Shown here: one piece after another, positions 1,029-25,200 of the stretch
Position numbering within the stretch: position 1 is the stretch's first letter
How the letters are laid out: each line of letters opens with the position of its first letter
Assembly: GCF_902652985.1 (NCBI RefSeq)
Contig: NC_047024.1
Coordinates: 36,022,001-36,086,000 of the forward strand
DNA from: Pecten maximus
Taxonomy: Eukaryota
Reading direction: 5' to 3'
Length of the DNA stretch: 64,000 nucleotides
Position numbers and translations under genes: made by a program
The notes under the pieces: generated by a model
What the model saw: the letters and a program-made list of their open reading frames with translations, nothing else
Databases searched by the model: none
Told to the model about the DNA's origin: nothing

Positions 1029-1185
1029 TCTTCCTTCACACAGTTAATGGTTGATTTTGGATTTGTTGTACCATTATCAGAGATGGGTTAACTAAGTCAT
1101 TTCTCAATGATGTTCTTCACTTGGTGTTGAATATGTAAAATATATTGAAATTGTATATGTAATCTATCTTTTTTTACACATATAG

Positions 1186-1275
1186 GTGTCAGCTAGATGA
1201 GGTGACAAAGGAAAAGAACTCCTTTCATCTACAGTTCAACAAGAGTAACCAAACTGCAGCTGACCTTCAGGACAG
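1186..1275 (+). CDS. LMNTD1: LMNTD1-like exon, coil 1B start (CQLDEVTKEKNSFHLQFNKSNQTAADLQDR)
   Basis: tatag| acceptor after a T-tract, AG|gtatt donor, 90 bp, phase 2-2; resembles lamin RKTLDSVAKERARLQLE. Confidence 0.8.
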
Positions 1276-4200
1276 GTATTGAATGTCAATCGGATGGAAA
1301 CAAATTAGATGCCACTATTAAGAATAAAATAGATTAATCATTTGGAGCTTTTTCATGCTGCGCATAATCAATTTGGTGAATCAGCCCTAAAATCATTCAT
1401 TTCATATTCATGTCATACACAGTTTACATCATACAGGACCATTTTTCCACTTGGATCTTCAGGCTCGTCTGGTAATGTGACCTAACTATGTATGGTAGCA
1501 GTCATTGCGGTTGATGACTTTTGCCCGTTCTCGTAGAGAACACAGGACCACGCCTGGCCACAACCTGCTCTTTCAATTCCAATCATGTATTTGTTCATTG
1601 TCTATCAGCTCTAAAAAAAAAAATAATACTTAACCCATTTTCCTTAACCAGGACAACATTTCCCTTAATAATGGTAATTGTATAATTATATGCCGCAGCT
1701 AAGACAGCCCTAAGTGCTATTTGTTTGATTTTGTTGACTTTGTATTATTTAGTATGTTAGAATAGTTTATAATGTTAATACCTAGTGATTTGTTTCATAA
1801 TACAGTTGTCAGTCTTTAAACTGTGTTTTTGATTGTTTATGAAATTTAAAGGAAAAAAAGCTCTGTTCATTGGTTGTAGGGATGACCAGAATTTGTCCCG
1901 AGAAAAATGTTTGTCTCAAGTAAAATGACCTCCCTTTTTGTCCCTAATAGAATTACCTCCCTTTTTGTCCCTAATAGAGTTACCTCCCTTTTCAACAATA
2001 AAACAAAACCCTTTAGAGACAACACTCCTGTTTATCCCTACTCTGCCTACATCTTTTTGAAATCCTTTTATAGACCATTCATATCACACATCATTTTTTG
2101 ATTTGTCAGATAAACAATTTTTTCATCTTTATCCTGTGTAAACCTCGTTATTGGTTGTTTTAGACCTAATTATGAACACATTTGTATTTTATACCTGGGT
2201 ATTGAATTTATTGACAATATTGATTTTTGTTAGATTTTCAGTAGAAGTAGACAAGAATAGGAAGCTAACAGACGACATCAATGTGTGTCAGAGAAAGATG
2301 GTGGCTTTACAGGCCGAACTGGAGGACGCCAAAATGTCATCCAGTCAACCCTACGAGGATATCAATCGGCTGCAGCGAGATATTGACTGCCTTGTAAGAG
2401 AAAATGAAAATTACAAGAGAAGGTAAGATGCTGTGTGATAGATATTTGTGCCACATCTGTGTGTTTGTCCCCATCAGTTGTCAAGTCACAAAACCTAGCA
2501 ATAGATGGAGTCATGTAGGTGATAAACCAGTAACTAACTAAAGCTGATAGAACACTGACTATAGTCGGTGAGACGAAACCTAGCAATAGGCGGAGTCGCC
2601 CATGTAGGCGGTAAACCAGTAACTAACTAAAGCTGATAGACCACTGACTATAGTCGGTGAGACGAAACCTAGCCATAGGCATAGTCATGTAGGTGGTAAA
2701 CCAGTAACTAACTAAAGCTGATAGACCACTGACTATAGTCGGTGAGACGAAACCTAGCAATAGATGGAGTCATGTAGGTGGTAAACCAGTCCCTAACTAA
2801 AGCTGATAGACCACTGACTTAAGTTAGTGAGACGAAACCTAACAATAGGTGGAGTGATGTAGGTGGTAAACCAGTAAATAACTAAAGCTGATAGACCACT
2901 GACTATAGTCGGTGAGAGGAAACCTAGCAATAGGGAGAGTCATGTAGGTGGTAAACCAGCAACTAAATAAAAATAATTACTTAAGTCAATGTGTTGCTCA
3001 ATACTGTGTATGTGATCAGCTGTTTGTAAATCTGACAGATACACAAAACAAAATAGATACAGGTAAGCTATGATTGATTTACTCTATTGAATGTGTCTGT
3101 AATTCAGAAGGAATACATTTGATTCATGAAACATGGGATATCATTATAGATGAAATATTCTGAGATCATCTAACAAAAACACCTGTTGTGACCCACTAAC
3201 TTTGTTGTAACATACGTATAGAACGGCTTTGTACGAGGCTTTAGTAAACACAGTAAAAGGGTACCTGTTATCTCAAGTGGTCGAGTATAAGTGAAGTATT
3301 TGATAGGGGTGTCAGTCTGTAGGGGAGCTGTTTATGGCAAACGTATAAAAAATGCCAGGAACTCAATACAGTAACACATTTACTGTATAGACCTACACAG
3401 TACTGAAGATATCTTACAATCGTTTATCGGTATATTTTCCTGGTAGAGCTGGTGATACTCACTTGGGGCAAAGTGAGTTTGGTAGGAAGTGACAACCAAT
3501 AGAACTGTCACAGGTGTTAGATAAGTGTATTGTGTTTTGTTATATTGCTGAATTATTGTTAATGTCTTGTAAATATTTGTGTGGTATATCCTGTTTAGAA
3601 TTACAGGACAATCGTATGGAGAACAGTGAAGTTCAGTAATCTTTTTACTGACCTAGTCCAATATTTATATTTTTATGGATTTTGAAAATAGATTATGGAT
3701 TTCTTATTTTTTCTAAAAATTTAGTCAATAGGACTTTTTATTACCTAGGACGTATATAGAGTATTGGCCCATGGTCTATGACGTGATGAGCATTGATGTT
3801 ATGATCTAAGGAATTTTATCGTTGTTGTGATTTTTAATATCATTAATCAGAATTGACAGGTTAATAAAGTGTGGATCAATAGTACATGATCTACAGCTGT
3901 TTAACATGTGATAAACATTCCATGTTTTTTCACAGATCTGAGAAGGAACAGTTAATTAGACAAGAGTGTGAGGACAAGCTGAGCCAGTGTATGAAGAAGG
4001 CCGAATTCAACGAACAGGTGTTCAACCAGCAGATGAACGAGGCCCGTGAACGGCTGAATGTATCCACGGCTACCATACTGTCACTGGAAGGTCGTGTGCG
4101 CGACCTGAGTAAGACGGACACTACGGTGCCCGAGATGATTCGTCAAGTGAGGGAGGCAGCCGAGGAGGAACTTGCTCAGTACAAAATGAATTCTGAAAAT

Positions 4201-7200
4201 GAATTCGCCCGCAATGTAAGTATATGTTGGCCTATCACAGCTGAAACCTTTCCTTATATATCACAGCTGACCTGGCATGAAAAAGTATACTGTGGTGAAA
4301 TTGATTATATACTGTAAATATACATATTTTAGAAGCCTGGGTATGTTAATTATTTTCTGCAGTAAGTGAGGTGGCCGCACCAATTGGCTAATCTGTTAAA
4401 TTCTGATATGCCCTAAAATTTGAGTGTGCCAAGATAAATATGCATTAACAGTATAATGTAGTAAGATTTAACTGTCTGTTCAGTATTGAAGTCCGATTGA
4501 TAGCAATTGTAAATGATTCCAAACACAGCGGTACAATTGTTATGTAATCAAGTATTAATTCATGTCATTGAGAGTAGATGGTCCAGACAATGGGATGTAT
4601 GTTATAAAATACAAATGTTTTGCCCACAGATAAACTCTCTGAAAGTCCAGATGGAAAATGATGCCCAAACAGTAGAAAGGATAAACCGAGAGAAATCTGA
4701 CCTGTTGGGAAGCACCGGCGAGTTAAAGGCCAGGATTACCTCCCTTGAGGGACAGGTATGTATGATATGTATTATTTTACATCTTCTCATAATTTGAATG
4801 TAATAAAATGTGTTGATAAAAAAGATGTTCAATGATTCTACTTTCACTTCATAAACTATAACAAGTGGTTTATACAACTTTCTACCACAATACCCTGTGT
4901 TATTCAACTCTCAGACCATCAGTTAATCATTACAGCCGTTGATTAACAATCTGTTTATACCACACGTGGTATAAACTCTGTACGCATTTCGATTGGCTAA
5001 CACGGTGAACTTTGACCCAAGCTGCAATTGTTATTGACGTCATCAATAATCTAATGACGTCACATCACCGGGTCCCGGACGTCACCGGTACACTTTATTT
5101 GCATACGCGAAATTATACTTGGCCACGTTTCCCTTTGATTCAATCCGATATTATTGTGGTAGAAACAGGTCACACGACTCGTGATTGTTGGATATGGAAT
5201 TTATTTCACACTCGTAAGTTATTTTTTAAAAGTTGCAAAAAACACTCGCTAAAGCTCGTGTCTTTTGTAACTTTAAAAAATAACTTACTCGTGTGAAATA
5301 AATTCCATATCCAACAACCACTCGTTGTGTAACCTCTATATCTCTGTGTTAGCTGACATATTGATCGAGATCACTGCTGCTCACACTGATAAAATTATAC
5401 ATTAACTATCCTCATTAATAAGCTTACACATTTATCAAGTTGGGAAAACTGCCAAGGAAAAACTGATGAACATTATACTTAAAACAGCTTACACACTTAC
5501 CAAGTAAGAGAAAAATTGGAGTAAAAGGTGGAGAAAATTTATGCACAATGTACTTAAAACAGTCCAATTTTCATCCTTTTCAAATGTCATGACATGTTCC
5601 TCATGGGCTTTGATTGTATCCGATGTGGATGGGTGTATATATGTAATTGGGGCCGCGGTGGCCGAGTGGTTAAGGTGTCCCGACACTTTAATGCTAGCCC
5701 TCCACCTCTGGGTTGCGAGTTCGAAACCTACGTGGGGCAGTTTCCAGGTACTGACCGTAGGCCGGTGGTTTTTCTCCGGGTACTCCGGCTTTCCTCCACC
5801 TCCAAAACCTGGCACGTCCTTAAATGATCCTGGCTGTTAATAGGACGTTAACAAAAACAAACAAACAAGTATATGTAATTAATTGATGACTTCTACTTAT
5901 CGTTACAGATACAGATGTTGGAACATCAGAGAAAGTCTGCTGAAGAAATGTTGCAGCAAGAACGACAGCGATCTGCTGAACAGATTCAAATCATGGAAAA
6001 GAAATTCCGGGAAGTCCAAGATTTACTTATTGTGAAAATGAGGGAAGTGAATGTGTCGCGAGACACAAACATCCCACTGAAGGCAGAGATTGAGGCCATG
6101 AAGGTTCTACTAGAGGAGGAGGAGCGCAGGTATATACTGTGGACTCTGTATATACTGTGGACTCTGTCCCATAACAATTCTTGGTTGTTATATTTTCAGT
6201 ATGGTGTTATATTTTCAGTATGGGTATTATCAATACTAGTGTAGTGGTGCATATCACATTTTTCACTCAGATATACAAGATGCAAACAGGGTCACTTAGA
6301 ATTTTGATATTTCTTACCACCATTTCTCAAAAACAAAAATTAAGGTGCTTAGTAACATTACCTCTCTTTATGGTTTAGTATGATTACCTCCCTTTATGGT
6401 TTAGTATGATACCTCCCTTTATGGTTTAGTATGATTACCTCCCTTTATGGTTTAGTATGATAACCTCCCTTTATGGTTTAGTAGGATTACCTCCCTTTAT
6501 GGTTAAGTATGATTACCTCCCTTTATGGTTTAGTATGATTACCTCCCTTTATGGTTTAGTATGATTACCTCCCTCTATGGTTAAGTATGATTACCTCCCT
6601 TTATGGTTTAGTATGATTACCACCATTTATGATCATTTTATTGATTTCCTCCCTTGATCTTAATGTGGAAGATTTAGCTCACAAGCATTAAATGTTTTAC
6701 AAATTTCTCCACAGTATATCACTGTGTCTGAACTTTGCCATTCTCTGATGTTTCAGACTTTGTAATTCTGCTGTTTTCACTACACAACAAACCACAACTA
6801 CGCCAGCTACTGTGGCATACACTGCCGCCATGCGACCTTTGACTCCCTCAGCTCCTCCCATGTCGCCAGCTCACCCAGCCATGTTTTCTAACATGCATCT
6901 GACAGAAGTCGGCCCGGATTCTATGGTGCCCCATACCGAGATGCTTGACCCTGTTGTATCTTCAACCCTAGCCAAACAGGAATATGAAACCATGGCATCC
7001 TCACCTGACTTCCCTTGTGCCACACGTTATACTTATGAGGCCACACCCAGTATGAACCGTCTACAGATCGAACCGTCACCACCTGTTACTCCTCGACCTG
7101 TTGGTCCAGTTGCCAGGGTCAAATCAGCCCCAGGTAAGTACAGACTGTTAATGATTATGTTATATATTGTTTTATATTGTTATATATTGTTTTATATACA

Positions 7201-10200: not shown

Positions 10201-13200
10201 GATATTGTATAGTGGACTGTTATCATAGATATTGTATAGTGGACTGTTATCTATAGATATTGTATAGTGGACTGTTATCTATAGATATTGTATAGTGGAC
10301 TGTTATCTATAGATATTGTATAGTGGACTGTTATCTATAGATATTGTATAGTGGACTGTTATCATAGATATTGTATAGTGGACTGTTATCTATAGATATT
10401 GTATAGTGGACTGTTATCTATAGATATTGTATAGTGGACTGTTATCTATAGATATTGTATAGTGGACTGTTATCTATAGATATTGTATAGTGGACTGTTA
10501 TCTATAGATATTGTATAGTGGACTGTTATCTATAGATATTGTATAGTGGACTGTTATCTATAGATATTGTATAGTGGACTGTTATCTATAGATATTGTAT
10601 AGTGGACTGTTATCTATAGATATTGTATAGTGGACTGTTATCTATAGATATTGTATAGTGGACTGTTATCTATAGATATTGTATAGTGGACTGTTATCTA
10701 TAGATATTGTGTATTGGACTGTTATCTATAGATATTGTATAGTGGACTGTTATTATAGAAAGTGTATATTGGACTGTTATCTATAGATATTTTCTATTGA
10801 ATGTTTGTATTTCAGACAATTTTTGTGTTTATCCGAAGTATAAGCCATCTATCTACACATACTCGTATAAACCTCGCTATGTGAATCCGAGCTATAAGCG
10901 TTACCTAGGTCACAGTGACGTGATTCCGAGCTATTCACGTTGCCTAGGTCACAGTGGTACGTCCCGCAATGCTGACAGTATTTGTCATAGATAGATTCTC
11001 ACCTGTTTTTTTTTGTTAAATGGAGGGTTGGGGATCATTTCAGTAGGGGCAAACCAATTTAGAGTCTATTTTACAGTCATAATTTGAAATTAGTTTTGTA
11101 TGAAATATATTTTATTTTAGTTTTTAAATTTGACTGGAATTTGAGTCTATACACTCTAAAGATAACAAAGTAAAATTGATATAATTAGCAAAGTCTAAAA
11201 CAATCTGTGTTCTGTGTGTTTGAAGTTTTTTCTTCTATTATAATCATAATTTACATCAAAATATAGAATAAAGAATATTGCAGTATAATTGGTTCAATTA
11301 ATGAAAGGTACCTTCTCTGCCTGACTTGATCTTCATTGATACAAAGAACTGGGAAATAACATGCTTTACCACAAACAATCACGCTGCTGAGTGGCTGTCA
11401 ATCACGTGCCCTAGGAATGCATGACTTGTAACAGCTTTGTTTGATCTAACAACCATTCATCCTTATTATGTTTGTAAATGCTTCATATAACTGATATCAA
11501 TATACAATAAAAAAAATATGGAAAAAAGCAAAAGATGAAAAAACCTAGTTAAAAAACAAGTAGAAATCTTAGCTTTTACGTTTTTTCATTTTAAGATTGC
11601 ATGGAATAGAGAATAGGCTTGAAATGCATGATACATGTTTATTATTAGTTCATCGACATTTCTTATCAACATTTCTTATCAACATTTCTTATCAACAATG
11701 TATTTTACATACTGGCTTGTTCAAATGACATTTTCAAAGGATTAGCACAGTACTTACCATTTGTACATGCCTGTTATAATTGAGGTATTCACTAAATACT
11801 GTCAAGAAACAACTTTTATGGAGGGAGATAATTCACTGTAGACTGTCAGATAACATGGTTAATTGAGGGGAGATAATTCACTGTAGACTGTCAGATAACA
11901 TGGTTAATGGAGGGGAGATAATTCACTGTAGACTGTCAGATAACAAGGTTAATGGAGGGGAGATAATTCACTGTAGACTGTCAGATAACATGGTTAATGG
12001 AGGGGAGATAATTCACTGTAGACTGTCAGATAACATGGTTAATGGAGGGGAGATAATTCATTGAATACTGTCAGATAACATGGTTAATGGAGGGGAGATA
12101 ATTCATTGAATACTGTCAGATAACATGGTTAATTGAGGGGAAAAATTAATTGAATACTGTCAAAAAACAATGTTAACAAGGGGAGAAAATTTATTGAATA
12201 CTGTCAGAAAACAAGGTTAATGGAGGGGAGATAATTCATTGGATACTGTCAGAAAACAAATTTAATGGAGAGCAGATAGTTCACTGTATACTGGCAGAAA
12301 ACAAATTTAATGGAGGGGAGATAATTCATTGAATACTGTCAGAAAACAAGGTTAATGGAGGGGAGATAATTCACTGTAGACTGCCATAAAACAAGGTTAA
12401 TGGAGGGAAGATAGTTCATTGAATACTGTCAGAACATTGATGTAGGGGAGATAACTGCTATAAACTAAATGTATGCATTAATGAATATACACTGTAGAGG
12501 ATGTTATTTACTAACAACTGTAAAAACCAAATATTCTAGTGCTGTTAGACAGGTTTTATTCACTATGAGGTTACCAGTCAGATTTTCTTATCTAAGATCT
12601 GATTAAGTTGATTTATATTTTTCATCTGTGTGCATTATTATCATTTGAAGCAAAATGTAAATTTTCAGAAAAAGTATTTAATATGATCTTTTTGAATAAC
12701 AGAATTAATCCTAACACTGGTCCATTTGATAGAGTAGAATTCATGTTGGATGTGAGAATGGATGTAGATTCACAAATCATGATTTATCTTTTGTGCCTTC
12801 AGCCTCCGGCCAGGGTAGAATCACAGCAGCAGGCCTTGTACCGGCCAGTCTTGGTCAAGGAAAGGACTACTTTGATGAAATGTTCCGTGATCTTACACGA
12901 GAGACACTTTACACACAAGTACGCCCAAAAAGTAGTCCCACTGAACGACAACCAACGTCGACATACCACGATTATAATACCTCCACCTCCAGGTGAGCTG
13001 ACTTTACCAATCACATCTGATATTACCTGTAACACTTGATCAACTATGTCCATCAATCTGACTGTCTACTTGTGGTCAGCCCAGACCTCTGGTTTAGTGA
13101 ATATGTGTTAGCTGAAAAGCTATGAGTTTTCTGCGACTGATGCTTTCCCTCGGTGGAAATTTCAGCTACAACATTTTCATAAATCCTATTATTATTTTAG

Positions 13201-16200
13201 GTGGTATTTCTAGGTTTTATGTCAATTTTAACCCAAATTATGGTTGATGTCTAGCTCAAGACATAAAATCCTATCTGTAAAATTTGTTTAAGAAGAGGTG
13301 GGCTTATTAACAGGCATGGGCTTATCATCTGTGTCTTGTAGATAATAATGGGCCATCGTAGGTATCTGTAACATGTCCTATGTATTCCGGTAGTGTCTAT
13401 AATGGTATGGTTGTAGATATCTCTTTATGTTAATGACACGGACATATAGATATTGATACAAAATGAAATACCTACATAAATGGTGTCACAAAAAGTGTTC
13501 AATGAAACAGGATTCATGATTTATAGAGGAATGAGACAAAATCAATAAAAATAATTTTTGTAAAGGAAACAATTAATTCAGTTAAACATTTTGATAAAAC
13601 CTTTAAACTGTAAGAAACCCTGCTGGTTCTCTTCTTGTAATGTAAATTCTTTGATAAGGCTAGTATGTGTATATTAAAGACATAAATAGCTTGAATTTGT
13701 TGCAATTTTTTACAAATTTGCAGCAGAAGTGAAAGTGTAGGACTCCCGGAGTGCGAGTCTCCCGACAACACATTTACGTTTAGGTACATCTACACGTTCT
13801 TTATCCTGTTGTATAGTCAATTTATCCTTTATATTTACTAATTTTTTTACCATCAGCAACGAACAAAATCTGTTGTGTTTTTTTTTCTTTTACTTGATTT
13901 TGTGCTTTAATTTTCCTAGGCCTGACACATCATTTGATGCTGAAATTCATGGAGCCTAACACATTTATGACAAATAATATAATAAATCATAAATATTCAT
14001 GAGAGATTTTAAATATATTAAGATCAAGAAAATATATGTAATGAAAATAAAATTCTCTTTACTGTCATTCCTATATTCTGTGTTTGTGTACAAGGTTTTA
14101 AGGGCAACACTGATCATTAACAAATGATTTGATTTTGCTTTGAATAAAAGAGATATTTCTGCTTTGTTGATGCCTCTGTACAACCATTGCTTATTGTGTT
14201 ATACTCCTCCCTCCACCTCTAAACATTTCATTATCAACATGTGTTCCTCTCAGTTATGATAATTTTATATTTAGATGTTATCACTCTTATGTTTACACCA
14301 TACACAGAATTACCCCCCAGACAGACTCCTGTATATATAATGTAGTAGATTTGTTCTCACTTGTTGATTGTTGTGTTGTACTGTTTACTTGTTATATCAG
14401 TCTGTTCAAAACCTACAAATGTTATCAAAATTTTAGAACTAAAAGAAAAATTTAAGAAAAGGAATTAAAAAGACGATGTATTTGTAATATGAATTTGACG
14501 GCATTTATCTATCTCGCAGTGAGGGTAAGAAAGCAAAGAAGGGCAAGTTAAAACGCAAATTGTGTGGTGAACAGTACTACTACGCCAGGTAAGGAGTGGT
14601 CAAACTTGTCCACCACTGCACGCCACCTGTATACCAATCATTAACCTGTGCATGCTGTACTTACTGTAATTCTACTGTTACTGGTCAGTAACACTGGATA
14701 CAACAGCTGATAAAACCCTGTATATCTAACTTATCTCTGGCAAACATGCAGATGAAAAATGTTTGGGATAATAAACAAGATCTGTCATCAATGGCATTTG
14801 TAGGAAACAAAATATTTGCACAGTAGTTCTAGATTCTTTTGGGAAAAATATTTTCAATCAAATCACTCTTAAATCCATGTAAAATCCACATGAATTTTTC
14901 TTTGAGAAAGAAATTCAGCTGATTATTTAATGTTTAGAATAACATTTTCAGGAAATTTATCAAAAGTAAAATCATGGAATTGAAATCTTTGAAACTAATA
15001 TTAAATGTAACTTTAAACTCAACATTTTTTCATGATGAACTACATATAAAATCATTTTATGTAAGCTTGTATTATACGCATGAACTTCATTGACCATTAA
15101 AACAATTGAATATAAGCATGTTGAGATACACAGGGCAAAGGGAAGTAACTCATGAGGATTAACACAATGTATTGTGAGATATTTATCAAACCATGTATTG
15201 GTGAGCAGGTTTTCTTTGACAAAAATATATCTATATTTATACCTAAGATATTAACAAACAAAGGCTAGACACAATATGTCATATTTAGTGTATGTAGGGA
15301 GTAGGATATTTTGCGTACTGGGACATGGTTTCTAGAGCTTTGTTTTGCCAGGAATTATCCAATTATGCAATACTGTATTTAGTAAAAAACATACACTGTA
15401 TATGTACCTTACATTTTCACAAAAATCAACAAATTAGTTTATTTGTCTGCATTATTCCCATATTTGACTTTTACAAACAAGAAACACCATTAAACTGCAT
15501 CAGCTGTCAGATTCACATACAACCATGTACAAATGTATCCTTATAAATGTTGACATTAAACATGTACATATCCATGGTATTGGTGACATTAAACATCTAC
15601 ATATCCATGGTATTGGTGACATTAAACATCCACATATCCATGGTATTGGTGATATTAAACATCTACATATCCTTGTTATTGGTGACATTAAACATCTACA
15701 TATCCATGGTATTGGTGACATTAAACATGTACATATCCATGGTATTGGTGACATTAAACATCTACATATCCTTGTAAATGTTGACATTAAACATCTACAT
15801 ATCCATGGTATTGGTGACATTAAACATGTACATATCCATGGTATTGGTGACATTAAACATCTACATATCCATGGTATTGGTTACATTAAACATCTACATA
15901 TCCTTGTAAATGTTGACATTAAACATCTACATATCCATGGTATTGGTGACATTAAACATGTACATATCCATGGTATTGGTGACATTAAACATCTACATAT
16001 CCTTGTAAATGTTGACATTAAACATCTACATATCCTTGTAAATGTTGACATTAAACATCTACATATCCATGGTATTGGTGACATTAAACATGTACATATC
16101 CTTGTTATTGGTGACATTAAACATCTACATATCCATGGTATTGGTGACATTAAACATCCACATATCCTTGTAAATGTTGACATTAAACATCTACATATCC

Positions 16201-19200
16201 GTGTTATTGGTGACATTAAACATCTACATATCCGTGTTATTGGTGACATTAAACATCTACATATCCATGGTATTGGTGACATTAAACATCTACATATCCT
16301 TGTAAATGTTGACATTAAACATCTACATATCCTTGTTATTGGTGACATTAAACATCTACATATCCATGGTATTGGTGACATTAAACATCTACATATCCTT
16401 GTTATTGGTGACATTAAACATCCACATATCCTTGGTATTGGTGACATTAAACATGTACATATCCATGGTATTGGTGACATTAAACATCTACATATCCATG
16501 GTATCACAAACACAATCACTTCGCGAATATGAACATAAATAAATTACATGTAATTTGAAAAATGATTAAAACTTTCAGAGAAGATTTCTCCACCTTCTTT
16601 CTGAGTTTACATCTTGTACACCTGATGTCTGGCATGACACTGTTTCCTGCCCTTTTCCCAATATTTTTTCAACATGACTTTGTTGATTTTTACCAACTGC
16701 CTGGGAGATGTTGGTATGGTGTAGATCCTACACCCCTGGATCCCCCATACTCTCATATAAACATCTCTATAATCATCGTGATACTAGTGTGACACTGCAG
16801 GCTTCTGTTCACATAAACAACACGGTACACTTTCTTCACCATGATGCATGAGCTCTAATTTACAGTTAAAGGTCCCCAAACATTTCTATTAACAGTTTTA
16901 TCATAATATTTTTTTTTTTATTTAGTTTATATATCACATGTATTTATGATTTGATATGCTTATATATATAAATATATTCTACTAAGAAATAGAATAGTTT
17001 GTTTCTTTTATGGCTTCAATAATCAGCAGAATAAAAACTAGATCACTGGTCAGGTCTGTGTCAGGTATGATCTGATAATCTACATACAGTATTTATTTGA
17101 AAATAAATCCCTGCCCTGTACAAGTAAGTGCCATTCTTCATTTTTGCAGGATCATCAATTTTGAAATAGTATAAGCTAAAATGGTTCACAAATAAGCCTT
17201 TCCCAACCTTAAATATTACAATTTTACACTAGGGGAGGGGGCTTATTTGAGGATAAATATGGTACTAAACTTTTACACTAGGGGAGGGGGCTTATTTGAG
17301 GATAAATATGGTACTAAACTTTTACACTAGGGGAGGGGGCTTATTTGAGGATAAATGTGGTACAAAACTTTTATACATGGGGAGGGGGCTTATTTGAGGA
17401 TAAATATGGTACTAAACTTTTACACTAGGGGAGGGGGCTTATTTAAGGATAAATATGGTACTAAACTTTTACACTAGGGGAGGGGGCTTATTTGAGGATA
17501 AATATGGTACTAAACTTTTACACTAGGGAAGGGGGCTTATTTGAGGAAACATATGGTACAAAACTTTCACACTAGGGGAGGGGGCTTATTTGAGGATAAA
17601 TATATCACTAAACTTTTAAACTAGGGGAGGTCTTATTTGAGGATAAATATATCACTAAACTTTTAAACTAGGGGAGGTCTTATTTGAGGATAAATACAGT
17701 TTACAGAACAATCCTGGACAGTAGTGGTCACATCTGTTAAGCTGTATTGTTTTTATTAAATCTAATGTAGATCGCCATTAAAAGTTTTAATTAAGATCAG
17801 TCCTTATCTAGAGATCCCTGTATCTGGTTACTCTGTAACGGGTCAGGATTGGAATACCATATGTATATCATCTTACACTGATCGCAATCTTTAAACCTGA
17901 TTCGGATATAAGTCTTCTGACGTGTGCCAATTACTAGATGTTACACTAACAAGACAGATATCAGAAATTAGATTTTAGAAATATTCTCCAATTTGGGTCG
18001 CATTATTTTGAGACTTTTTTTTCCTGGACTGTTGTATAATTGTACTCCCCTAAAAGCAGAGTAATTGCCCTTTATTCTCCATGGGTAACATTGTCTGGGT
18101 ATATCTCCTATACTATTTCATCTACCAAGACTGTATAGTTATGGCCCATTATATTGGACCAGTTATATGGTTTTATGTCACAAAAGTTAATAAGGTTAAT
18201 ACAGTCAGACATCGTGCCTTTAGGTGTGCCGGCCGGCCAAGTCATCATTTTCTTACTTTCATTTATCAGAAAGTCTGTTGTCATTGCTAAGCACCCATAC
18301 ATTCCATATTGGTATTTCGGTTTGGTATCAACATGGTAAATGATTTGCTGTACTTATAGTCTGACCCGGACAGTGGCTGGTGGAGATTAGCTGATTAAAG
18401 TATTTACACTAAGCTGTATACTTTCTACTCCCTGTACATAAACCTTGTTTGAGACATAGCTCGGGCCACAGATATTACATTGTGGTAAAGGTTTACTAGC
18501 TTTGATATAAAAAATAGACATTATGTGATACCTACACATTACTGTCTATGACTGAATGTGAACATCAATTTAGTTTCTTTGAGCCATAATCATTGAAGGC
18601 AGTTTCAATCTTTTGCAATTTTTTTTATTTAGAGAACTTATTTTTATAACCTATTTTCTTTTCTAATTTTTCATTTGTTTGTACCATTTTACAGTGTACA
18701 GTTCAAATTCAGTTTTATTGAGATTTCTAACATTTAATCTCAATACAGTATTTGACCTAAGTGAATAATATAGCCATGCTGCCTGAGTTAGATTTTGGTT
18801 CTGGTGTTAATACTGCATCTGACTCTTTACTTCTCTGTGTGATACTGTGTCTGACTCTTTATTTCTCAGTTTGATACTGTGTCCGACTCTTTACTTCTCT
18901 GTTTGATACTGTGTCTGACTCTTTACTTCTCTGTTTGATACTGTGTCTGACTCTTTACTTCTCGGTTTGATACTGTGTCTGACTCTTTACTTCTCTGTTT
19001 GATACTGTGTCTGACTCTTTACTTCTCGGATTGATACTGTGTCTGACTCTTTACTTCTCGGTTTGATTCTGTGTCTGACTCTTTACTTCTCAGATTGATA
19101 CTGTGTCTGACTCTTTATTTCTCTGTTTGATACTGTGTCTGACTCTTTACTTCTCGGTTTGATACTGTGTCTAACTCTTTACTTCTCGGTTTGATACTGT

Positions 19201-22200
19201 GTCTAACTCTCAGTGAAAGTTCTCGTGGTGCAATGTCAGTTGTGATGTCACTAAGTGTTCTGTATGGACATGTTATTTAATGTGTTGAGTGATTGTCAAC
19301 AAACACCAACAATAGCTTGTTCATATCAATTTATACGTTAGCCATTGTTGTCATAACTGTGATACCAGTTGTCAATATTCATGAGATCAAATTGTTTTAT
19401 GTTTACTGTGAAAAGATATGACCATTAAGTACGTGTATATCTACATAGGTGTGGAGGAGGCTGTTACTCTGTTTCTTACAGCAAGAATTGACACAAATCA
19501 ATGAAACAGTTATTATCTGTACTAGACAGACGGACAAACTGTACTAGACGGACGGACAAACAGATAGACAGACAGGCTTTGGGAGACATACATAGACGCA
19601 TTATTGCATTTTGTATAGAGAAAACGTCCATATGTTCTTTTTGTAAGGACAAGTTTATATATTGGATGATACACATGTGTCTAGGAATGAGCCAAACCTC
19701 AAATCAGCCTTTTTGCATACTCTGCTTATTTGCATATTTTCACCTGAAAAAAATCACAAGCAAATAAGCAAATTCCTCTGTATATGAAAACATTGGTTGA
19801 AATTTTCCAAGTTTGAACAAAAATAAGTGAACACAAGATACTAGATTGCTTAGGAGTTGGATTTTGGTGTTTCTGGTGTAAGATGTCTTAAAAACGATAT
19901 TTAACAATAATGATATAAATGTTAGTTCAAATCTCTGATGATTAGAATAGGCTTATCAAAAATCTATAGCATTTACGGTAAATCTGTTTGGAGTACCTAT
20001 GATTGCCACTATGTGTGACGACTGGGTCGTACGAGGCTCAATGGTACCTTGATCCGTGCATAAGACCTTCAGAATTTGAATGACATTACGATTACTAAAT
20101 CATTGGAGTTTTATCCCTGTGTTACCATATACAGCAATTGTTTAAGTATTAAACTGGCCAGTGGTATTGGTGATAGGTGATCATTGTACTCGACAGGTAA
20201 ATCAATACCGACAAGTTTACATAGAAACCAGCTGTATGTATACACACTACCTATACCACTTCACATAGTGACTTGATACTACCACGAGGAAAAAACTCAA
20301 ACTACAGGTAAAAACCATGTCCTGATGTTATAAGTGTGTTAACGAGATTTGTGTTTATTGTGACTTATACCTTCTTCATGGATTATCACATTGACAGTGC
20401 CATAGGAGACATCAAGATCCTTGAGGTGAACCAGGAGGGCAAGTACATCCGGCTGTCCAACGACTCGGAGCAGGTAAGTGTTGGGTACAGGTGTGAACTT
20501 CCCAGAGTACAATAGGAATCCTATCTGTATTGTATCTTAGGGTTTTTGACAAAATGGACACATGCTTTGACAGATATTAATTAATATGCTTTGTTTGTGA
20601 TAAAGTATTGTCTTACTATACAGAGTACAGACAAACTTTTATAGTTAGCGTGTGAACATTTGAATTAGAGGCCATGAATGAAAAGCTAATGCAACTAAGT
20701 TTTTCTTTGTTGTTTTGGTAGAATATTGAAGATTTTTGTAACTCAACACAAATCGTAAGATACTAAAAATGGACTAATATATATATATATTTTTTTCTTA
20801 CTTAATTTTTTTAATGTGTTTTTATGAAACATCTTCTGGATATGCTATAATATGTGACTTAATGAAACCAAGTTTATATTCATAGTTTTATAATGTCATT
20901 GTCAATGGTTAATAATTACAAATAAAGTGAAAAATGCAATTTAATTAAATTTTCTGAGAAGTGAATTTTAATTACATGATAGACCAAATTTAAGGTACTG
21001 TACAAGTCATTAAATTAGACATTGGTTTTGGGTGATCCTGTTGTTACAAGTACAGTATTGAGATTGTTGGCTTGATAAAACGCTAGATTTAAATAATACT
21101 TGTAAACTAATGGCATTTGTCGGTCCATGTAATTTAAATAAATCTGCAATAAAATTCAGATTAAATATCCAATATGTGTCTCGAACACACAAAATGTATA
21201 TGTTATCTGACATGTGAAGCATCAGCGGTACCTGTTATTGAGGGCATGGAAACATTTAAGTCGGTGGTAATCCAGGTGACATTGTTACACCTCCTGGATA
21301 TCATTACGGAGAGATAGGTGTAGATTTAGAAGGAAATGGTATGTTGAGAGTTCACAAAGAAAAAATGTTCAACAGAAAAAATATGTGTGTTTATATCAAA
21401 GGAAAAACTTTCATTTTTCATAGAAGTAAAACTTCAAAAAAGCTCATTTGACTATCACGTATATATATGTGGTACTGGTACATTATTTGGACTACCCTGT
21501 ATGTGTGGTACATTATTTGGACTACCCTGTATGTGAGGTACATTATTTTGTCTACCCTGTATATGTGATACATTATTTTGTCTACCCTGTATGTGTGGTA
21601 CATTATTTTGTCTACCCTGTATGTGTGGTACATTATTTGGACAACCCTGTATGTGAGGTACATTATTTGGACTACCCTGTATGTGTGGTACATTATCTGG
21701 ACTACCCTGTATGTGTGGTACATTATTTGGACTACCCTGTATGTGTGGTACATTATTTGGACTACCCTGTATGTGTGGTACATTATTTGGACTACCCTGT
21801 ATGTGTAGTACATTATTTGGACTACCCTGTATGTGTGGTACATTATTTTTTATACCCTGTATGTGTGGTTCATTATTTGGACTACCCTGTATGTGTGGTT
21901 CATTATTTCGTCTACCCTGTATGTGTGGTACATTATTTGGACTACCCTGTATGTGAGGTACATTATCTGGACTACCCTGTATGTGAGGTACATTATTTGG
22001 ACTACCCTGTATGTGTGGTACATTATTTGGACTACCCTGTAATGTATGTGAGGTACATTATTTGGACTACCCTGTATGTGAGGTACATTATTTGGACTAC
22101 CCTGTATGTGTGGTACATTATTTGGACTACCCTGTATGTGAGGTACATTATTTGGACTACCCTGTATGTGTGGTACATTATCTGGACTACCCTGTATGTG

Positions 22201-25200
22201 TGGTACATTATCTGGACTACCCTGTATGTGAGGTACATTATTTGGACTACCCTGTATGTGAGGTACATTATTTGGACTACCCTGTATGTGAGGTACATTA
22301 TTTGGACTACCCTGTATGTGTGGTACATTATTTGGACTACCCTGTATGTGAGGTACATTATTTGGAATACCCTGTATGTGTGGTACATTATTTTTTATAC
22401 CCTGTATGTGTGGTACATTATTTGGACTACCCTGTATGTGTGGTACATTATTTGGACTACCCTGTATATGTGGTACATTATTTGGACTACCCTGTATGTG
22501 TGGTACATTATTTTTTATACCCTGTATGTGAGGTACATTATCTGGATTACCCTGTATGTGAGGTACATTATTTGGACTACCCTGTATGTGTGGTACATTA
22601 TTTGGACTACCCTGTATGTGTGGTACATTATTTGGACTACCCTGTATGTGTGGTACATTATTTGGACTACCCTGTATGTGAGGTACATTATTTGGACTAC
22701 CCTGTATTTGTGGTACATTATTTTGTCTACCCTGGATGTGTGGTTCATTATTTTGTCTACCCTGGATGTATATTTACTTGGCAGTTAATTTAGACACCTC
22801 CATATCTGGTGTGCTATTCTGTTAAGAGACCAATGTTATAACAGTGCTGTCTATTCCTAAACCTTGTCATATTTTATTACCTGTACACAAAGCACACCTG
22901 CTATTTTCAATCTGACAGGTTAAATCCACAATTCATGCAATTTCTTCCCTTTAACGTTTCATAATGGATTGTAGACTTATCTATTGTCTCAAACAATAGT
23001 GCTACAATCTGTGGCCATATTGTATGATAGACTGCCGTCACAGTCAAACAGTTACTCTGAGAACAGTTACTCAACAGCCTGTATACCTGGCTTAGTTGGT
23101 TTGTATAACAGACTTTATGATCAGTTAGCTAAATTTTAAAACATATTTCATTGCTTGTATATACTAAATTAGCTGAATATCAAAACATATTTCATTATTT
23201 AATTAAAAACTCCAGAATTCAAATAAATTTGATGAAATTTAAGGGTTGTAGAAATATAGGTGTAAATTGAATTAAAAATACCTAGAAAATTACTTACATT
23301 ATATCTCAATACAAATATAGATATTGGTCTTAGAATGATACATTATTATGTACAGCAATAGAAGAAATGACTGTAGTTACAGTTTTACTCTATTGCTTTT
23401 ATATTGGCTGATGTCCATTGTGAAGCAAAAAAAATGATATTGTGTTATTATTATGTGGACATATTACTGATGACTATATTTTGTATATCTAGGAGGCAGA
23501 GTTTGGAGGGTTTATGATCCAACAGAATGTCGGAGGACACCCAGTAGCTGTATACAGATTCCCTTCACGCGCCAAATTCCCCAAACAGTCCACCATCACT
23601 GTGTGGTCAGGAAGTAACGAGGCCATCCTACACCAACCCCCAACAGACTACGTGTGGAAGGAGCAAAGCAAGTGGGGCACTGGGCCCGAATGTACCACCA
23701 TCCTCTGTAAACCTAACGGCCAGGTAGGTCCTCAAACAGTTTTAGTCCACGAGGTTTCTCAAAACTGAACTATGTAATGGAATTTTGATGGATAATGTGT
23801 TCTCATTAGGAAACTTTTTCCTTGTGCGACAAAAGTCAGACTTGTTTCATTCTTGTTGATTTGACCAGTGGTGTCATTGTGACTTATTTCAAATTTGACC
23901 TAGATCTGTATGGTAGGTGTTGTCTTGACCTAGATTTGTATGGTTGGTGTTGTCTTGACCAAGATTTGTATGGTGGGTGTTGTCGTGACTAAGATTTGTA
24001 TGGTGCGTGTTGACCAAGATTTGTATGGTGGGTGTTGTCGTAACCTAGATTGTATGGTGGGTGTTGTCGTGACCTAGATTTGTATGATGGGTGTTATCTT
24101 GACCTAGATTTGTATGGTTGGTGTTGTCTTGACCAAGATTTGTATGGTGGGTGTTGTCGTGACCAAGATTTGTATAGTGCGTGTTGTCATGACCAAGATT
24201 TGTATGGTGGGTGTTGTCGTAACCTAGATTTGTATGGTGGGTGTTTTCGCGACCTAGATTTGTATGGTGGGTGTTGTCGTAACCTAGATTTGTATGGTGG
24301 GTGTTGTCGTGACCTAGATTTGTATGGTGGGTGTCACCAGTAAAGTAGAAGGAGCTTCCTCTTCTGGAACACCTGGTCTGAGTCATGTATACTTTTTCTT
24401 TGGTCCATACAAATGCATCTTTTTGTTCATATTTTGCCCTCATTTGATCAAATTGGAGTTACATGAAGTATACTGAATGAGTGAGAGAAAAAGAGTCGTT
24501 ATTATGTCAGCATTATCACTGTTATTTATATTGTAGAATTTCATGGTAACAGTGTAGAATTTCATTGTTTACATTGTAGACCTGCATTGTATACAATGTA
24601 GAATTTCATTGTTTACATTGTAGAAGTTCATTTTATGCATTATAGACTTCCATTGTTTACATTGTTCACATCATTGTTTACATTGTAGAATTTCATTGTT
24701 TACATTGTGAAATTTCATTGCTTACATTGTAGAATTTCATTGGTTACAATGTAGAATTTCATTGTTTACATTGTAAAATTTCATTACTTACATTGTAGAA
24801 TTTCATTGTTTACAGTAGAATTTCATTGTTTACATTGTAGAAGTTCATTGTTTGCATTATAGACTTTCATTGTTTACATTGTTCACATCATTGTTTACAT
24901 TGTAGGCTATTGCATGGACTACAGCTGCACACAGATTCACCAGAAACGCGTTTGAAGATACACGACCAAACTCAGACTTAGACGACTATCAAGGTGGGTA
25001 CCAGATTTCCTCCATAGATAATATTTGTTTGATATATATTTATCAGCTCAGAATGCGAACTCTTAATTTCCTTTAATCAAATAGCTGAAAATGATTTATT
25101 AAACATAAGTAATAAAAAAAAGGTTTTTACTTGACATTACTAATGGAGTGTCACGCTATCCCATCCACAATATAACACTACAGTGTGGTAGGACCAGGGC

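What the first reader, a model, noticed from the sequence alone, without database searches (positions are those of the whole stretch)
1186..24993. LMNTD1-type tail domain still attached to a lamin-type IF rod: possible ancestral form of a third lamin-derived lineage
Seen: a frame-consistent splice model joins ~300 aa of coiled coil ending in an IF termination motif to a tail domain with LMNTD1-type signatures (QQNV, HQPPTD, WKEQ, TILCKPNGQAIAW). Established: human LMNTD1/IFLTD1 has no IF rod. The offset from L(DEVTKE) to E(QLIR) is 94 residues, the same as LMNA L92 to E186 as recalled, so the 42-residue lamin/protostome coil-1B extension is present. Inference: LMNTD1 began as a complete IF protein, distinct from lamin and from classical cytoplasmic IFs, and mammals lost the rod. 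This may be an uncharacterised filament system.
Basis: partly seen in the sequence, partly recalled or inferred. Interest (0 to 1): 0.75.

Follow-up and report, generated by a model that had tools for sequence, protein, structure and literature searches.

The report
Scallop cilin/nematocilin (LMNTD1-family) filament gene

Summary
They are an internal part of one gene of about 45 kb. A database protein maps onto it at 100% identity: RefSeq LOC117335906 of Pecten maximus, named 'uncharacterized protein', with 10 isoforms of 1113-1168 aa.

All 10 isoforms carry:
- a full intermediate-filament (IF) rod (Pfam Filament 3.6e-25, lamin-length, starting upstream of the window);
- a lamin tail domain (LTD, 2.2e-14);
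- a conserved C-terminal tail.

In 4 of 4 RNA runs 6129 is spliced to 6757. In 10 of 10 isoforms two constant linker exons, plus up to two small cassette exons, lie between rod and LTD.

Separate rod and LTD trees both place the protein with named vertebrate LMNTD1/2 and a coral homologue. The scallop's own lamin and two candidate cytoplasmic IF genes fall on the other side (rod branch 100/100, LTD branch 88/80). A protostome-only origin is rejected (p 3e-76 for the rod, 3e-5 for the LTD).

The evolutionary inference is already in print. Kollmar 2015 described nematocilins as rod + IG + tail domain and said mammals lost the rod. Kremnyov et al. 2025 united LMNTD1/2, nematocilin and cytovec as 'cilin', a cilia-associated filament.

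Verdict: correct, ordinary, already known. One loose end is an NLS-like cassette exon placed where lamins carry their NLS.

The parts
1186..1275 (+). Rod exon (coil 1B, CQLDEVTKE...); coding exon 3 of the gene. Exons 1 and 2 lie upstream of the window, at about -10824..-10805 and -6464..-5532.
   Evidence: Read. P0151 maps at 100% identity. RNA joint 1275>2234 with GT..AG in 4 of 4 runs.
2234..2422 (+). Rod exon (coil 1B).
   Evidence: RNA joint 2422>3936 in 2 of 4 runs. The intron at its 5' border sits at the same aligned place as a lamin-gene intron.
3936..4215 (+). Rod exon (end of coil 1B, linker, start of coil 2).
   Evidence: RNA joint 4215>4630 in 4 of 4 runs. The phase-0 intron is shared with the lamin gene.
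4630..4755 (+). Rod exon (coil 2).
   Evidence: RNA joint 4755>5909 in 4 of 4 runs. The phase-0 intron is shared with the lamin gene.
5909..6129 (+). Last rod exon, ending in the IF rod-end motif EIEAMKVLLEEEERR.
   Evidence: It aligns without gaps on lamin ...EIMAYRKLLEGEEERL. RNA joint 6129>6757 in 4 of 4 runs. The intron is shared with the lamin gene.
6757..7133 (+). Constant linker exon (Ser/Thr/Pro-rich) directly after the rod.
   Evidence: P0151 residues 620-746. Present in 10 of 10 isoforms. RNA contigs in 4 of 4 runs.
12803..12992 (+). Constant linker exon with the conserved motif LGQGKDYFDEMFRDL.
   Evidence: Present in 10 of 10 isoforms. The motif is also seen in other molluscs, a flatworm and a catshark homologue.
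13724..13783 (+). Cassette micro-exon (60 nt, phase 2 at both ends).
   Evidence: Included in 7 of 10 isoforms (absent from X4, X9, X10).
14520..14588 (+). Cassette micro-exon (69 nt) encoding the NLS-like stretch KKAKKGKLKRKL just before the LTD.
   Evidence: Included in 7 of 10 isoforms (absent from X5, X9, X10). phmmer aligns it on the NLS region of lamin A.
20398..20473 (+). LTD exon 1 (SAIGDIKILEVNQEGKYIRLSNDSEQ).
   Evidence: Pfam LTD positions 5-32, E 0.065. Its 3' intron is shared with the lamin gene.
23493..23723 (+). LTD exon 2 (QQNV, HQPPTD, WKEQ, TILCKPNGQ).
   Evidence: Pfam LTD positions 36-100, E 3.7e-6. It gives 297 database hits at E<=1e-3, among them named LMNTD1 and LMNTD2.
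24906..24993 (+). LTD exon 3 (AIAWTTAAHRF...) and start of the tail.
   Evidence: Its 5' intron is shared with the lamin gene.
25457..25726 (+). Tail exon, the conserved part (VYLRREKQ..., GNDNS..NRQSRSQ.TRPDP). It probably corresponds to Kollmar's nematocilin tail domain.
   Evidence: Aligned with oyster, nemertean, flatworm, coral and vertebrate homologues.
26169..26275 (+). Tail exon (GQPYAG...MGSAPLRKF).
27800..27835 (+). Optional tail micro-exon (SFWNNSSRNRKT).
   Evidence: Absent from isoforms X2, X6 and X10; X7 has a different tail at this point.
31520..31618 (+). Alternative last coding exon (...SLVRFTS, stop TAA), used in isoforms X3 and X6.
33744..33887 (+). Alternative last coding exon (...DFLPPMPRPPLFSSW, stop TAG), used in 6 of 10 isoforms. 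This ending is conserved from coral to shark.

Best explanation
The stretch is the middle of the Pecten maximus gene LOC117335906. This gene is the scallop orthologue of the nematocilin/cilin family, whose vertebrate members are called LMNTD1 and LMNTD2.

It encodes a complete intermediate-filament protein:
- a head of about 257 aa;
- a 363-aa rod of lamin length (long coil 1B);
- a linker of about 190-230 aa;
- a lamin-type Ig-fold tail domain (LTD);
- a conserved C-terminal tail domain, with no CaaX box.

Shown here: the gene structure, the splicing of the rod exons, the domain content, and the orthology of rod and LTD.

Inferred from the family's literature, not tested here: the protein dimerises through the rod and forms cytoplasmic filaments associated with cilia (gill, larval velum, sperm flagellum), as reported for Hydra nematocilin and Mnemiopsis cilin, and as suggested by expression in oyster ciliated cells.

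The gene descends from a lamin-type gene in which rod and LTD were already joined. Mammals later lost the rod.
For: Gene identity:
- P0151 ('uncharacterized protein LOC117335906 isoform X3 [Pecten maximus]') maps at 100% identity onto the window and its upstream flank. Its contig length equals that of the window's contig.

Domains:
- P0151 has Pfam Filament at residues 258-620 over profile positions 1-313 of 313 (E 3.6e-25), and LTD at 851-960 (E 2.2e-14).
- Exon by exon: the upstream exon gives Filament E 2.8e-9. The LTD exons give E 0.065 and 3.7e-6.

One transcript:
- RNA contigs join all rod exons and join 6129 to 6757 with GT..AG. Four of the five joints are seen in 4 of 4 runs and one in 2 of 4.
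- All 10 RefSeq isoforms hold rod and LTD.
- A close mussel-like relative has proteins of 1000-1063 aa on contigs of 3358-3759 nt. These are too short to hold introns. Both Pfam domains are on record for the cluster's representative, P0003.

Orthology:
- The LTD exon's hits include named LMNTD1/IFLTD1/LMTD1 in 9 of the 20 hits looked up, and LMNTD2 in 1 of 20. The LTD is 50-53% identical to the LTD of seal, aardvark and hamster LMNTD1.
- Rod tree: 39 rows, 363 columns. 21 cilin-like rows, including lungfish, caecilian and turtle LMNTD1 and a coral protein, are split from 16 lamins plus 2 partial cIF rows at 100/100.
- LTD tree: 48 rows, 113 columns. The same split has 88/80 support.
- Forcing all protostome rows into one clade is rejected: rod p-AU 3e-76, LTD p-AU 3e-5.
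- The tail after the LTD, including the PPMPRPP..SSW ending, is conserved across phyla.

Lamin descent:
- 6 of the 9 mapped introns in rod and LTD lie at the same aligned places as introns of the scallop lamin gene.

Literature:
- Kollmar 2015 and Kremnyov 2025.
Against: - Function and localisation were not tested here.
- No read or contig shown to me spans from the rod to the LTD in this species. The 3000-nt contig of run X4 continues 962 nt past 7133, but that part was not displayed.
- The five window rod exons give no Pfam Filament hit singly.
- Support for the LTD split is only 88/80. An AU test that forced the window protein alone onto the lamin side was not rejected (p 0.129). That test was badly posed, because near-identical sisters stayed on the other side.
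- The AU groups were named after the trees had been seen.
- Cytoplasmic IFs are represented only by single exons of two unnamed candidate genes.
- 7 of 10 isoforms carry an NLS-like cassette, whereas the cilin group is described as lacking an NLS.
Confidence: 0.9

Rival explanations
1. It is a CaaX-less nuclear lamin paralogue of molluscs. The NLS-like cassette sends it to the nucleus, where it joins the lamina.
For: Automatic names of orthologues say 'lamin-B2-like', 'lamin-B2.L-like' or 'lamin-A-like'. The cassette KKAKKGKLKRKL sits just before the LTD and aligns on the lamin A NLS. It is included in 7 of 10 isoforms. The rod has lamin length and 6 introns are shared with the lamin gene.
Against: None of the 10 isoforms ends in CaaX, whereas the scallop's own lamin P0298 ends in CSIM. 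The rod is 22.9% identical to that lamin, against 28.6-30.8% to lungfish LMNTD1 and the coral homologue. Rod and LTD lie across well-supported branches from 16 lamins. Among the proteins I inspected, the cassette is seen only in three scallop genera. The paper on CaaX-less lamins mentions no scallop or nematocilin (term search only).
Confidence: 0.06
2. It is an ordinary protostome cytoplasmic IF protein. These also keep a long coil 1B and an LTD.
For: The architecture of rod + LTD without CaaX is what protostome cytoplasmic IFs have (Kollmar 2015).
Against: Two candidate cytoplasmic IF genes of the same genome (C2) fall on the lamin side of the rod tree (100/100) and of the LTD tree. They lack the QQNV, HQPPTD and CKPNGQ signatures. 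The window protein has a 257-aa head, a long linker and the conserved tail shared with vertebrate LMNTD1. Caveat: only single, partial exons of the cIF genes were used.
Confidence: 0.02
3. Two neighbouring genes, a coiled-coil gene and an LTD gene, were wrongly merged by the reader and by automatic annotation.
For: About 14 kb of repeat-rich intron lies between 6129 and 20398. No displayed read links rod and LTD directly. The haplotig copy is annotated as a partial 'calcium-binding and coiled-coil domain-containing protein 1-like'.
Against: The same rod + LTD order is found in 19 of 19 close homologues from molluscs and a nemertean, and in coral, flatworm, shark, lungfish and caecilian proteins. 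Intron-free contigs of 3.4-3.8 kb encode proteins of 1000-1063 aa in a mussel-like relative, and the representative P0003 has both rod and LTD. RNA contigs run from the rod through 6757-7133 and on. Rod and LTD trees give the same relationships.
Confidence: 0.02

Closest known systems
Nematocilin (Hydra), cytovec (Nematostella) and cilin (Mnemiopsis); bilaterian 'nematocilins'
   Same: A lamin-derived IF lineage separate from lamins and from canonical cytoplasmic IFs, built as rod + IG/LTD + conserved tail domain without CaaX (Kollmar 2015; Kremnyov 2025). The coral homologue P0036 groups with the scallop protein in both the rod and the LTD tree. Both share the PPMPRP... ending.
   Different: According to Kremnyov et al., Hydra, Hydractinia and Morbakka nematocilins lack the LTD; the scallop protein keeps it. 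The scallop protein has a long head (about 257 aa), a 190-230-aa linker and an optional NLS-like cassette, whereas the family is described as lacking an NLS. No named Hydra or Mnemiopsis sequence was in my trees.
Vertebrate LMNTD1 (IFLTD1) and LMNTD2
   Same: The LTD is 44-53% identical. It shares the signatures (I/L)QQN, HxPP(S/T)D and TILCKPNG. Tail motifs are shared. The rods of lungfish, caecilian, turtle and Xenopus proteins group with the scallop rod.
   Different: Mammalian LMNTD1 has no rod: Pfam finds only the LTD in seal P0057. The scallop gene is a single copy with 10 annotated isoforms, while tetrapods have two paralogues (Kremnyov 2025).
Nuclear lamin (scallop 'lamin Dm0-like' P0298; lamin A/B Ig-fold structures)
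   Same: The rod has the same length, with indels of only 1, 3 and 2 columns. The LTD matches lamin A/C and B1 Ig-fold chains at E of about 1e-20. Six intron positions are shared.
   Different: It has no CaaX, whereas the lamin ends in CSIM. Rod identity is 22.9%. It lies on the opposite side of the 100/100 rod branch. The LTD signatures are absent from 120 of 120 lamins.
Protostome cytoplasmic IF proteins
   Same: A long coil 1B, an LTD and no CaaX.
   Different: The candidate scallop cIF exons group with lamins, not with this gene. The LTD intron pattern differs: the cIF gene splits the part that is one exon (23493-23723) here. The cIF genes were not searched for the conserved cilin tail.

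Membership tests
Intermediate filament proteins (Pfam Filament PF00038) | Coil 1A start motif (LNDR..Y...VR.L) | tested here: met
   EKEELQRLNDRFSSYVQRVRQLREQ lies in the exon upstream of the window. It gives Filament positions 1-60 at E 2.8e-9 and aligns with lamins.
Intermediate filament proteins (Pfam Filament PF00038) | Full rod ending in the conserved rod-end motif | tested here: met
   P0151 residues 258-620 cover profile positions 1-313 of 313, at 89.7 bits against a cut-off of 40. PLKAEIEAMKVLLEEEERRL aligns without gaps on KLDNEIMAYRKLLEGEEERL. Taken singly, 0 of 5 window rod exons hit Filament.
Intermediate filament proteins (Pfam Filament PF00038) | Assembly into ~10-nm filaments | not testable with these tools
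   Needs in-vitro assembly or electron microscopy.
Nematocilin / cilin / LMNTD1-2 | Architecture of rod + IG (LTD) + conserved C-terminal tail domain | tested here: met
   Filament and LTD. The tail is conserved with oyster, nemertean, flatworm, coral, caecilian and shark homologues. That this tail is Kollmar's 'NTD' is my reading; his Supplementary Fig. S6 was not seen.
Nematocilin / cilin / LMNTD1-2 | Rod groups with family members, apart from lamins and cIFs | tested here: met
   21 rows form one side of a 100/100 branch; p-AU 3e-76 against a protostome-only clade. The cIFs were partial single exons.
Nematocilin / cilin / LMNTD1-2 | LTD groups with named LMNTD1/2 | tested here: met
   the split has 88/80 support; p-AU 3e-5.
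Nematocilin / cilin / LMNTD1-2 | No CaaX box | tested here: met
   0 of 10 isoforms end in CaaX. The endings are LFSSW, VRFTS, SAPEH and TVSFA.
Nematocilin / cilin / LMNTD1-2 | No nuclear localisation signal (Kremnyov 2025) | tested here: inconclusive
   7 of 10 isoforms include KKAKKGKLKRKL, which aligns on the lamin A NLS. No NLS predictor or experiment was run.
Nematocilin / cilin / LMNTD1-2 | Expression in or localisation to ciliated cells and sperm | not tested
   Known only from the literature, for oyster larvae, sea urchin, Mnemiopsis and human. The tissues of the RNA runs were not examined.
Nuclear lamins | C-terminal CaaX | tested here: not met
   The scallop lamin P0298 has CSIM.
Nuclear lamins | Groups with lamins in trees | tested here: not met
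Protostome cytoplasmic IFs | Groups with protostome cIFs | tested here: not met
   The test is limited, because the cIF rows are single exons of two unnamed candidate genes on contig C2.

The most novel reading that the evidence does not exclude
In scallops the cilin gene carries an alternatively spliced 69-nt cassette (14520-14588). It encodes a lamin-like NLS at exactly the lamin position, just before the Ig fold. One gene would then make both a nuclear and a cytoplasmic/ciliary filament protein. That would be a living intermediate between lamin and cytoplasmic IF, in a family so far described as lacking an NLS.
Probability: 0.12. Interest if true: 0.5.

Novelty: already known. Interest (0 to 1): 0.18.

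Why it matters
It matters little as a discovery. The gene is in RefSeq as an 'uncharacterized protein'. The idea that LMNTD1 is a rod-less remnant of a third, lamin-derived IF lineage was published in 2015 and extended in 2025.

The work still has practical value:
- It gives this scallop gene and its mollusc orthologues, now labelled 'uncharacterized' or 'lamin-B2-like', a proper family name.
- It documents the full exon structure and the introns shared with the lamin gene.
- It flags three small points worth a specialist's look: an NLS-like cassette, a conserved GQGKDYFDEMF linker motif, and a flatworm family member where the family was reported absent.

Tried and rejected
- Whole-genome search of G000 with Pfam LTD found only the window's own exon, so it could not list lamin or cIF LTD exons. 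I used the lamin protein P0298 as the query instead.
- No complete cytoplasmic IF protein was obtained. The lamin search listed 120 lamins and no cIF. I therefore used single exons of two candidate cIF genes on contig C2 as separate partial rows, without joining them.
- The AU test forcing only the window protein onto the lamin side gave p 0.129. I consider it badly posed and replaced it with the test, whose groups were chosen after seeing the trees.
- ARAGORN found no tRNA gene in 4700-6000, so my impression of a tRNA-like repeat there is unsupported.
- A word search of earlier scan notes found nothing.
- The paper on CaaX-less lamins holds none of my terms except one use of 'Bivalvia'.
- Not done: structure prediction, fold search, the ESM Atlas and Rfam. 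The question did not need them.
- Joined step left out: I never assembled or searched my own spliced model. Searches of window sequence were exon by exon. Whole-protein analyses used the database's own proteins, P0151 and others.
- Supplementary files were not opened. Kremnyov's Supplementary file 1 and Supp. Figs 1, 8 and 9, and Kollmar's supplementary figures and alignments, may already contain a scallop or oyster sequence and the tail-domain alignment.
- Papers seen: Kremnyov 2025 as abstract and outline, passages and sections 5 and 10 in full. Kollmar 2015 as passages only. PMC10125929 as a term search only. All other titles as search listings only.

Full report
WHAT IS THERE. The window is G000:C10:36022001-36086000, + strand. 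Five coiled-coil exons lie at 1186-1275, 2234-2422, 3936-4215, 4630-4755 and 5909-6129, all with AG/GT borders and consistent phases. They encode about 302 residues ending in EIEAMKVLLEEEERR. Three exons at 20398-20473, 23493-23723 and 24906-24993 encode a lamin tail domain with QQNV, HQPPTD, WKEQ and TILCKPNGQ|AIAW.

Searched exon by exon, Pfam gives LTD for the first two tail exons (E 0.065 and 3.7e-6). It gives no Filament hit for any of the 5 rod exons. I did not build or search a joined model of my own.

THE GENE IS LARGER THAN THE FINDING. Upstream of the window (L003), an exon encodes a long head and the canonical coil-1A start EKEELQRLNDRFSSYVQRVRQLREQ (Pfam Filament positions 1-60, E 2.8e-9).

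Searching the LTD exon 23493-23723 against 1.84 billion representatives gave 297 hits at E<=1e-3. The best was a 1160-aa protein. A search with that protein returned P0151, 'uncharacterized protein LOC117335906 isoform X3 [Pecten maximus]', 1153 aa, on a contig whose length equals that of C10. P0151 maps at 100% identity onto the window and its flank.

The start codon lies at about -10824 and the head/coil-1A exon at about -6464..-5532. After 6129 come these exons:
- 6757-7133 and 12803-12992;
- two cassettes, 13724-13783 and 14520-14588;
- the three LTD exons;
- tail exons 25457-25726, 26169-26275 and 27800-27835;
- alternative last exons 31520-31618 and 33744-33887.

RefSeq lists 10 isoforms of 1113-1168 aa. 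All 10 contain the rod, both constant linker exons and the LTD. They differ only in the two cassettes and in the C-terminal exons. None joins 6129 directly to 20398.

RNA. Four runs from four studies were laid on 1186-7185. Only X1 is on record as RNA; the kind of the other three is a guess or unknown, but their contigs skip the introns. Contigs skip the introns at GT..AG as follows:
- 1275>2234: 4 of 4 runs;
- 2422>3936: 2 of 4 runs;
- 4215>4630: 4 of 4 runs;
- 4755>5909: 4 of 4 runs;
- 6129>6757: 4 of 4 runs.

So the rod is spliced as read, but it continues into exon 6757-7133 and not into the LTD. One 3000-nt contig (X4) carries 962 further letters beyond 7133. Under every annotated isoform these would include the LTD, but that part was not displayed, so this is inference. 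A direct 6129>20398 joint would appear only as a loose end. None is among the rows shown, and 240 rows were not shown.

Indirect support for a single transcript comes from a mussel-like relative. It has proteins of 1000-1063 aa on contigs of 3358-3759 nt, which leave no room for introns. Both Pfam domains are on record for the cluster's representative, P0003.

IS IT AN IF ROD OF LAMIN TYPE? On the database protein P0151, Pfam Filament covers residues 258-620 (363 aa) against all 313 profile positions (E 3.6e-25). LTD covers 851-960 (E 2.2e-14). The scallop's own lamin, P0298, spans 357 aa for the same profile.

In a 39-sequence alignment, the rod differs from that lamin and from an orang-utan lamin B2 only by indels of 1, 3 and 2 columns. 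The rod end aligns on lamins without gaps. Against solved structures, residues 246-520 match lamin A 22-290 (E 4e-14) and the LTD matches lamin Ig folds (E about 1e-20). That lamins carry 42 residues more in coil 1B than vertebrate cytoplasmic IFs is established knowledge. No short-rod sequence was aligned here.

WHICH LINEAGE? Of 20 LTD-exon hits whose names I looked up:
- 9 are named LMNTD1, IFLTD1 or LMTD1 (lungfish, two caecilians, seal, aardvark, turtle, lizard, hamster, gar);
- 1 is LMNTD2 (gecko);
- 4 have automatic 'lamin-like' names (snail, coral, Xenopus, horn shark);
- 4 are uncharacterised, hypothetical or 'LTD domain-containing';
- 2 have no name.

The four signatures occur in 79, 27, 47 and 47 of the 150 listed hits, and in 0 of 120 lamins.

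For the trees I chose 37 database proteins and 2 single-exon rows out of about 370 sequences held:
- 21 cilin-like proteins;
- 16 lamins, 14 of them from the 120 and 2;
- 2 single-exon pieces of candidate cIF genes on contig C2.

In the rod tree (363 columns), the 21 cilin-like rows sit on one side of a 100/100 branch. The lamins, including the scallop lamin, and the cIF pieces sit on the other. The LTD tree adds nine proteins found with the LTD exon. They include rod-less mammalian LMNTD1 and a gecko LMNTD2, and two LTD exons of one candidate cIF gene replace the two rod exons, giving 48 rows and 113 columns. It shows the same split at 88/80. Holding all protostome rows together is rejected (rod p-AU 3e-76, LTD p-AU 3e-5), though the groups were named after the trees had been seen. 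A first AU test that moved only the window protein gave p 0.129 and is uninformative.

Rod identity is 22.9% to the scallop lamin, 28.6% to lungfish LMNTD1 and 30.8% to the coral protein. The region after the LTD (VYLRREK..., GNDNS.NRQSRSQ.TRPDP...PPMPRPP..SSW) is conserved from coral to shark. Six of the nine mapped introns of rod and LTD lie at the same aligned places as introns of the scallop lamin gene. This fits descent from a lamin-type gene in which rod and LTD were already joined.

WHAT IS KNOWN. Kollmar 2015 (PMC4448529; passages) says:
[quoted passage not shown] Kremnyov et al. 2025 (bioRxiv 10.1101/2025.08.21.671432) identify Kollmar's human nematocilin as LMNTD1. They show the full IF architecture of LMNTD1 in turtles and frogs, and unite nematocilin, cytovec, cilin and LMNTD as 'cilin'. 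They localise the ctenophore protein to cilia and report oyster 'nematocilin' enriched in ciliated larval cells. Their supplements, which may list mollusc sequences, were not opened.

MECHANISM. Shown: domain content, splicing of the rod, and orthology. Inferred: the rod forms coiled-coil dimers that assemble into cytoplasmic, cilia-associated filaments. The Ig-fold LTD and the conserved tail would serve as interaction surfaces. Alternative C-termini and cassettes would tune this. I put about 0.9 on the family assignment and about 0.6 on the ciliary role in the scallop.

LOOSE ENDS. The cassette 14520-14588 encodes KKAKKGKLKRKL. It is present in 7 of 10 isoforms and is aligned by phmmer onto the lamin A NLS. 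Among the proteins I inspected it occurs only in three scallop genera. The family is described as lacking an NLS, so this is the most novel reading left open.

Noticed in passing
window 14520-14588 (and 13724-13783): Two phase-2 cassette micro-exons lie just before the LTD. The second encodes the NLS-like stretch KKAKKGKLKRKL. It is in 7 of 10 RefSeq isoforms and aligns on the lamin A NLS. Among the inspected proteins it is seen only in Pecten, Mizuhopecten and Ylistrum.
   Followed up: partly
window 31520-31618, 33744-33887, 27122-27214: Alternative C-terminal coding exons. The ending ...PPMPRPPLFSSW (33744-33887) is conserved in oyster, Solemya, flatworm, coral, caecilian and catshark homologues. 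The ...SLVRFTS ending is shared with abalone and a nemertean.
   Followed up: partly
window 12803-12992: The linker exon holds the motif LGQGKDYFDEMFRDL, conserved across molluscs and recognisable in a flatworm (GEGRDYFEELFEDI) and a catshark (GQGRDYFNLLIQDL) homologue. I did not see it mentioned in the passages I read.
   Followed up: no
proteins P0038 and P0173 (Macrostomum lignano), found with window 23493-23723: A flatworm has a protein of about 925 aa with a cilin-type LTD (58% identity), a rod and the tail motifs. It sits inside the spiralian cilin clade, on a long branch. Both papers state that the family is absent from Platyhelminthes. Kollmar put a grouping of flatworm 'lamins' with nematocilins down to branch attraction.
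   Followed up: partly
rod and LTD exon borders of the window gene compared with L014/L015 (scallop lamin gene, C9:45.096-45.112 Mb): Six of nine mapped introns lie at the same aligned positions as lamin-gene introns. The pairs are residues 348/144, 504|505/295|296, 546|547/337|338, 620/411, 877|878/486|487 and 954|955/563|564.
   Followed up: yes
L002 = G000:C1479:4898-9332: A 99% identical copy of window 1040-2482 lies on a small contig, probably the other haplotype. Its gene model may be P0341, 'calcium-binding and coiled-coil domain-containing protein 1-like, partial' (427 aa, on a 14,965-base contig); that this contig is C1479 was not checked.
   Followed up: no
window 4786-5385 and 5586-5985: Intronic repeats are covered by very many RNA-run contigs (summed depth up to about 489,000), so they are abundant dispersed elements. 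ARAGORN finds no tRNA gene there.
   Followed up: partly
window 15525-16532, 21448-22788, 23880-24340, 24540-24900: Intronic tandem repeats produce long spurious open reading frames on both strands (read).
   Followed up: no
L006-L013 = G000:C2:24.596-24.636 Mb and 24.434-24.474 Mb: Two candidate cytoplasmic IF genes of the scallop. They have LNER/LNKR coil-1A starts, YRKLLEGEE-type rod ends and a split LTD.
   Followed up: partly
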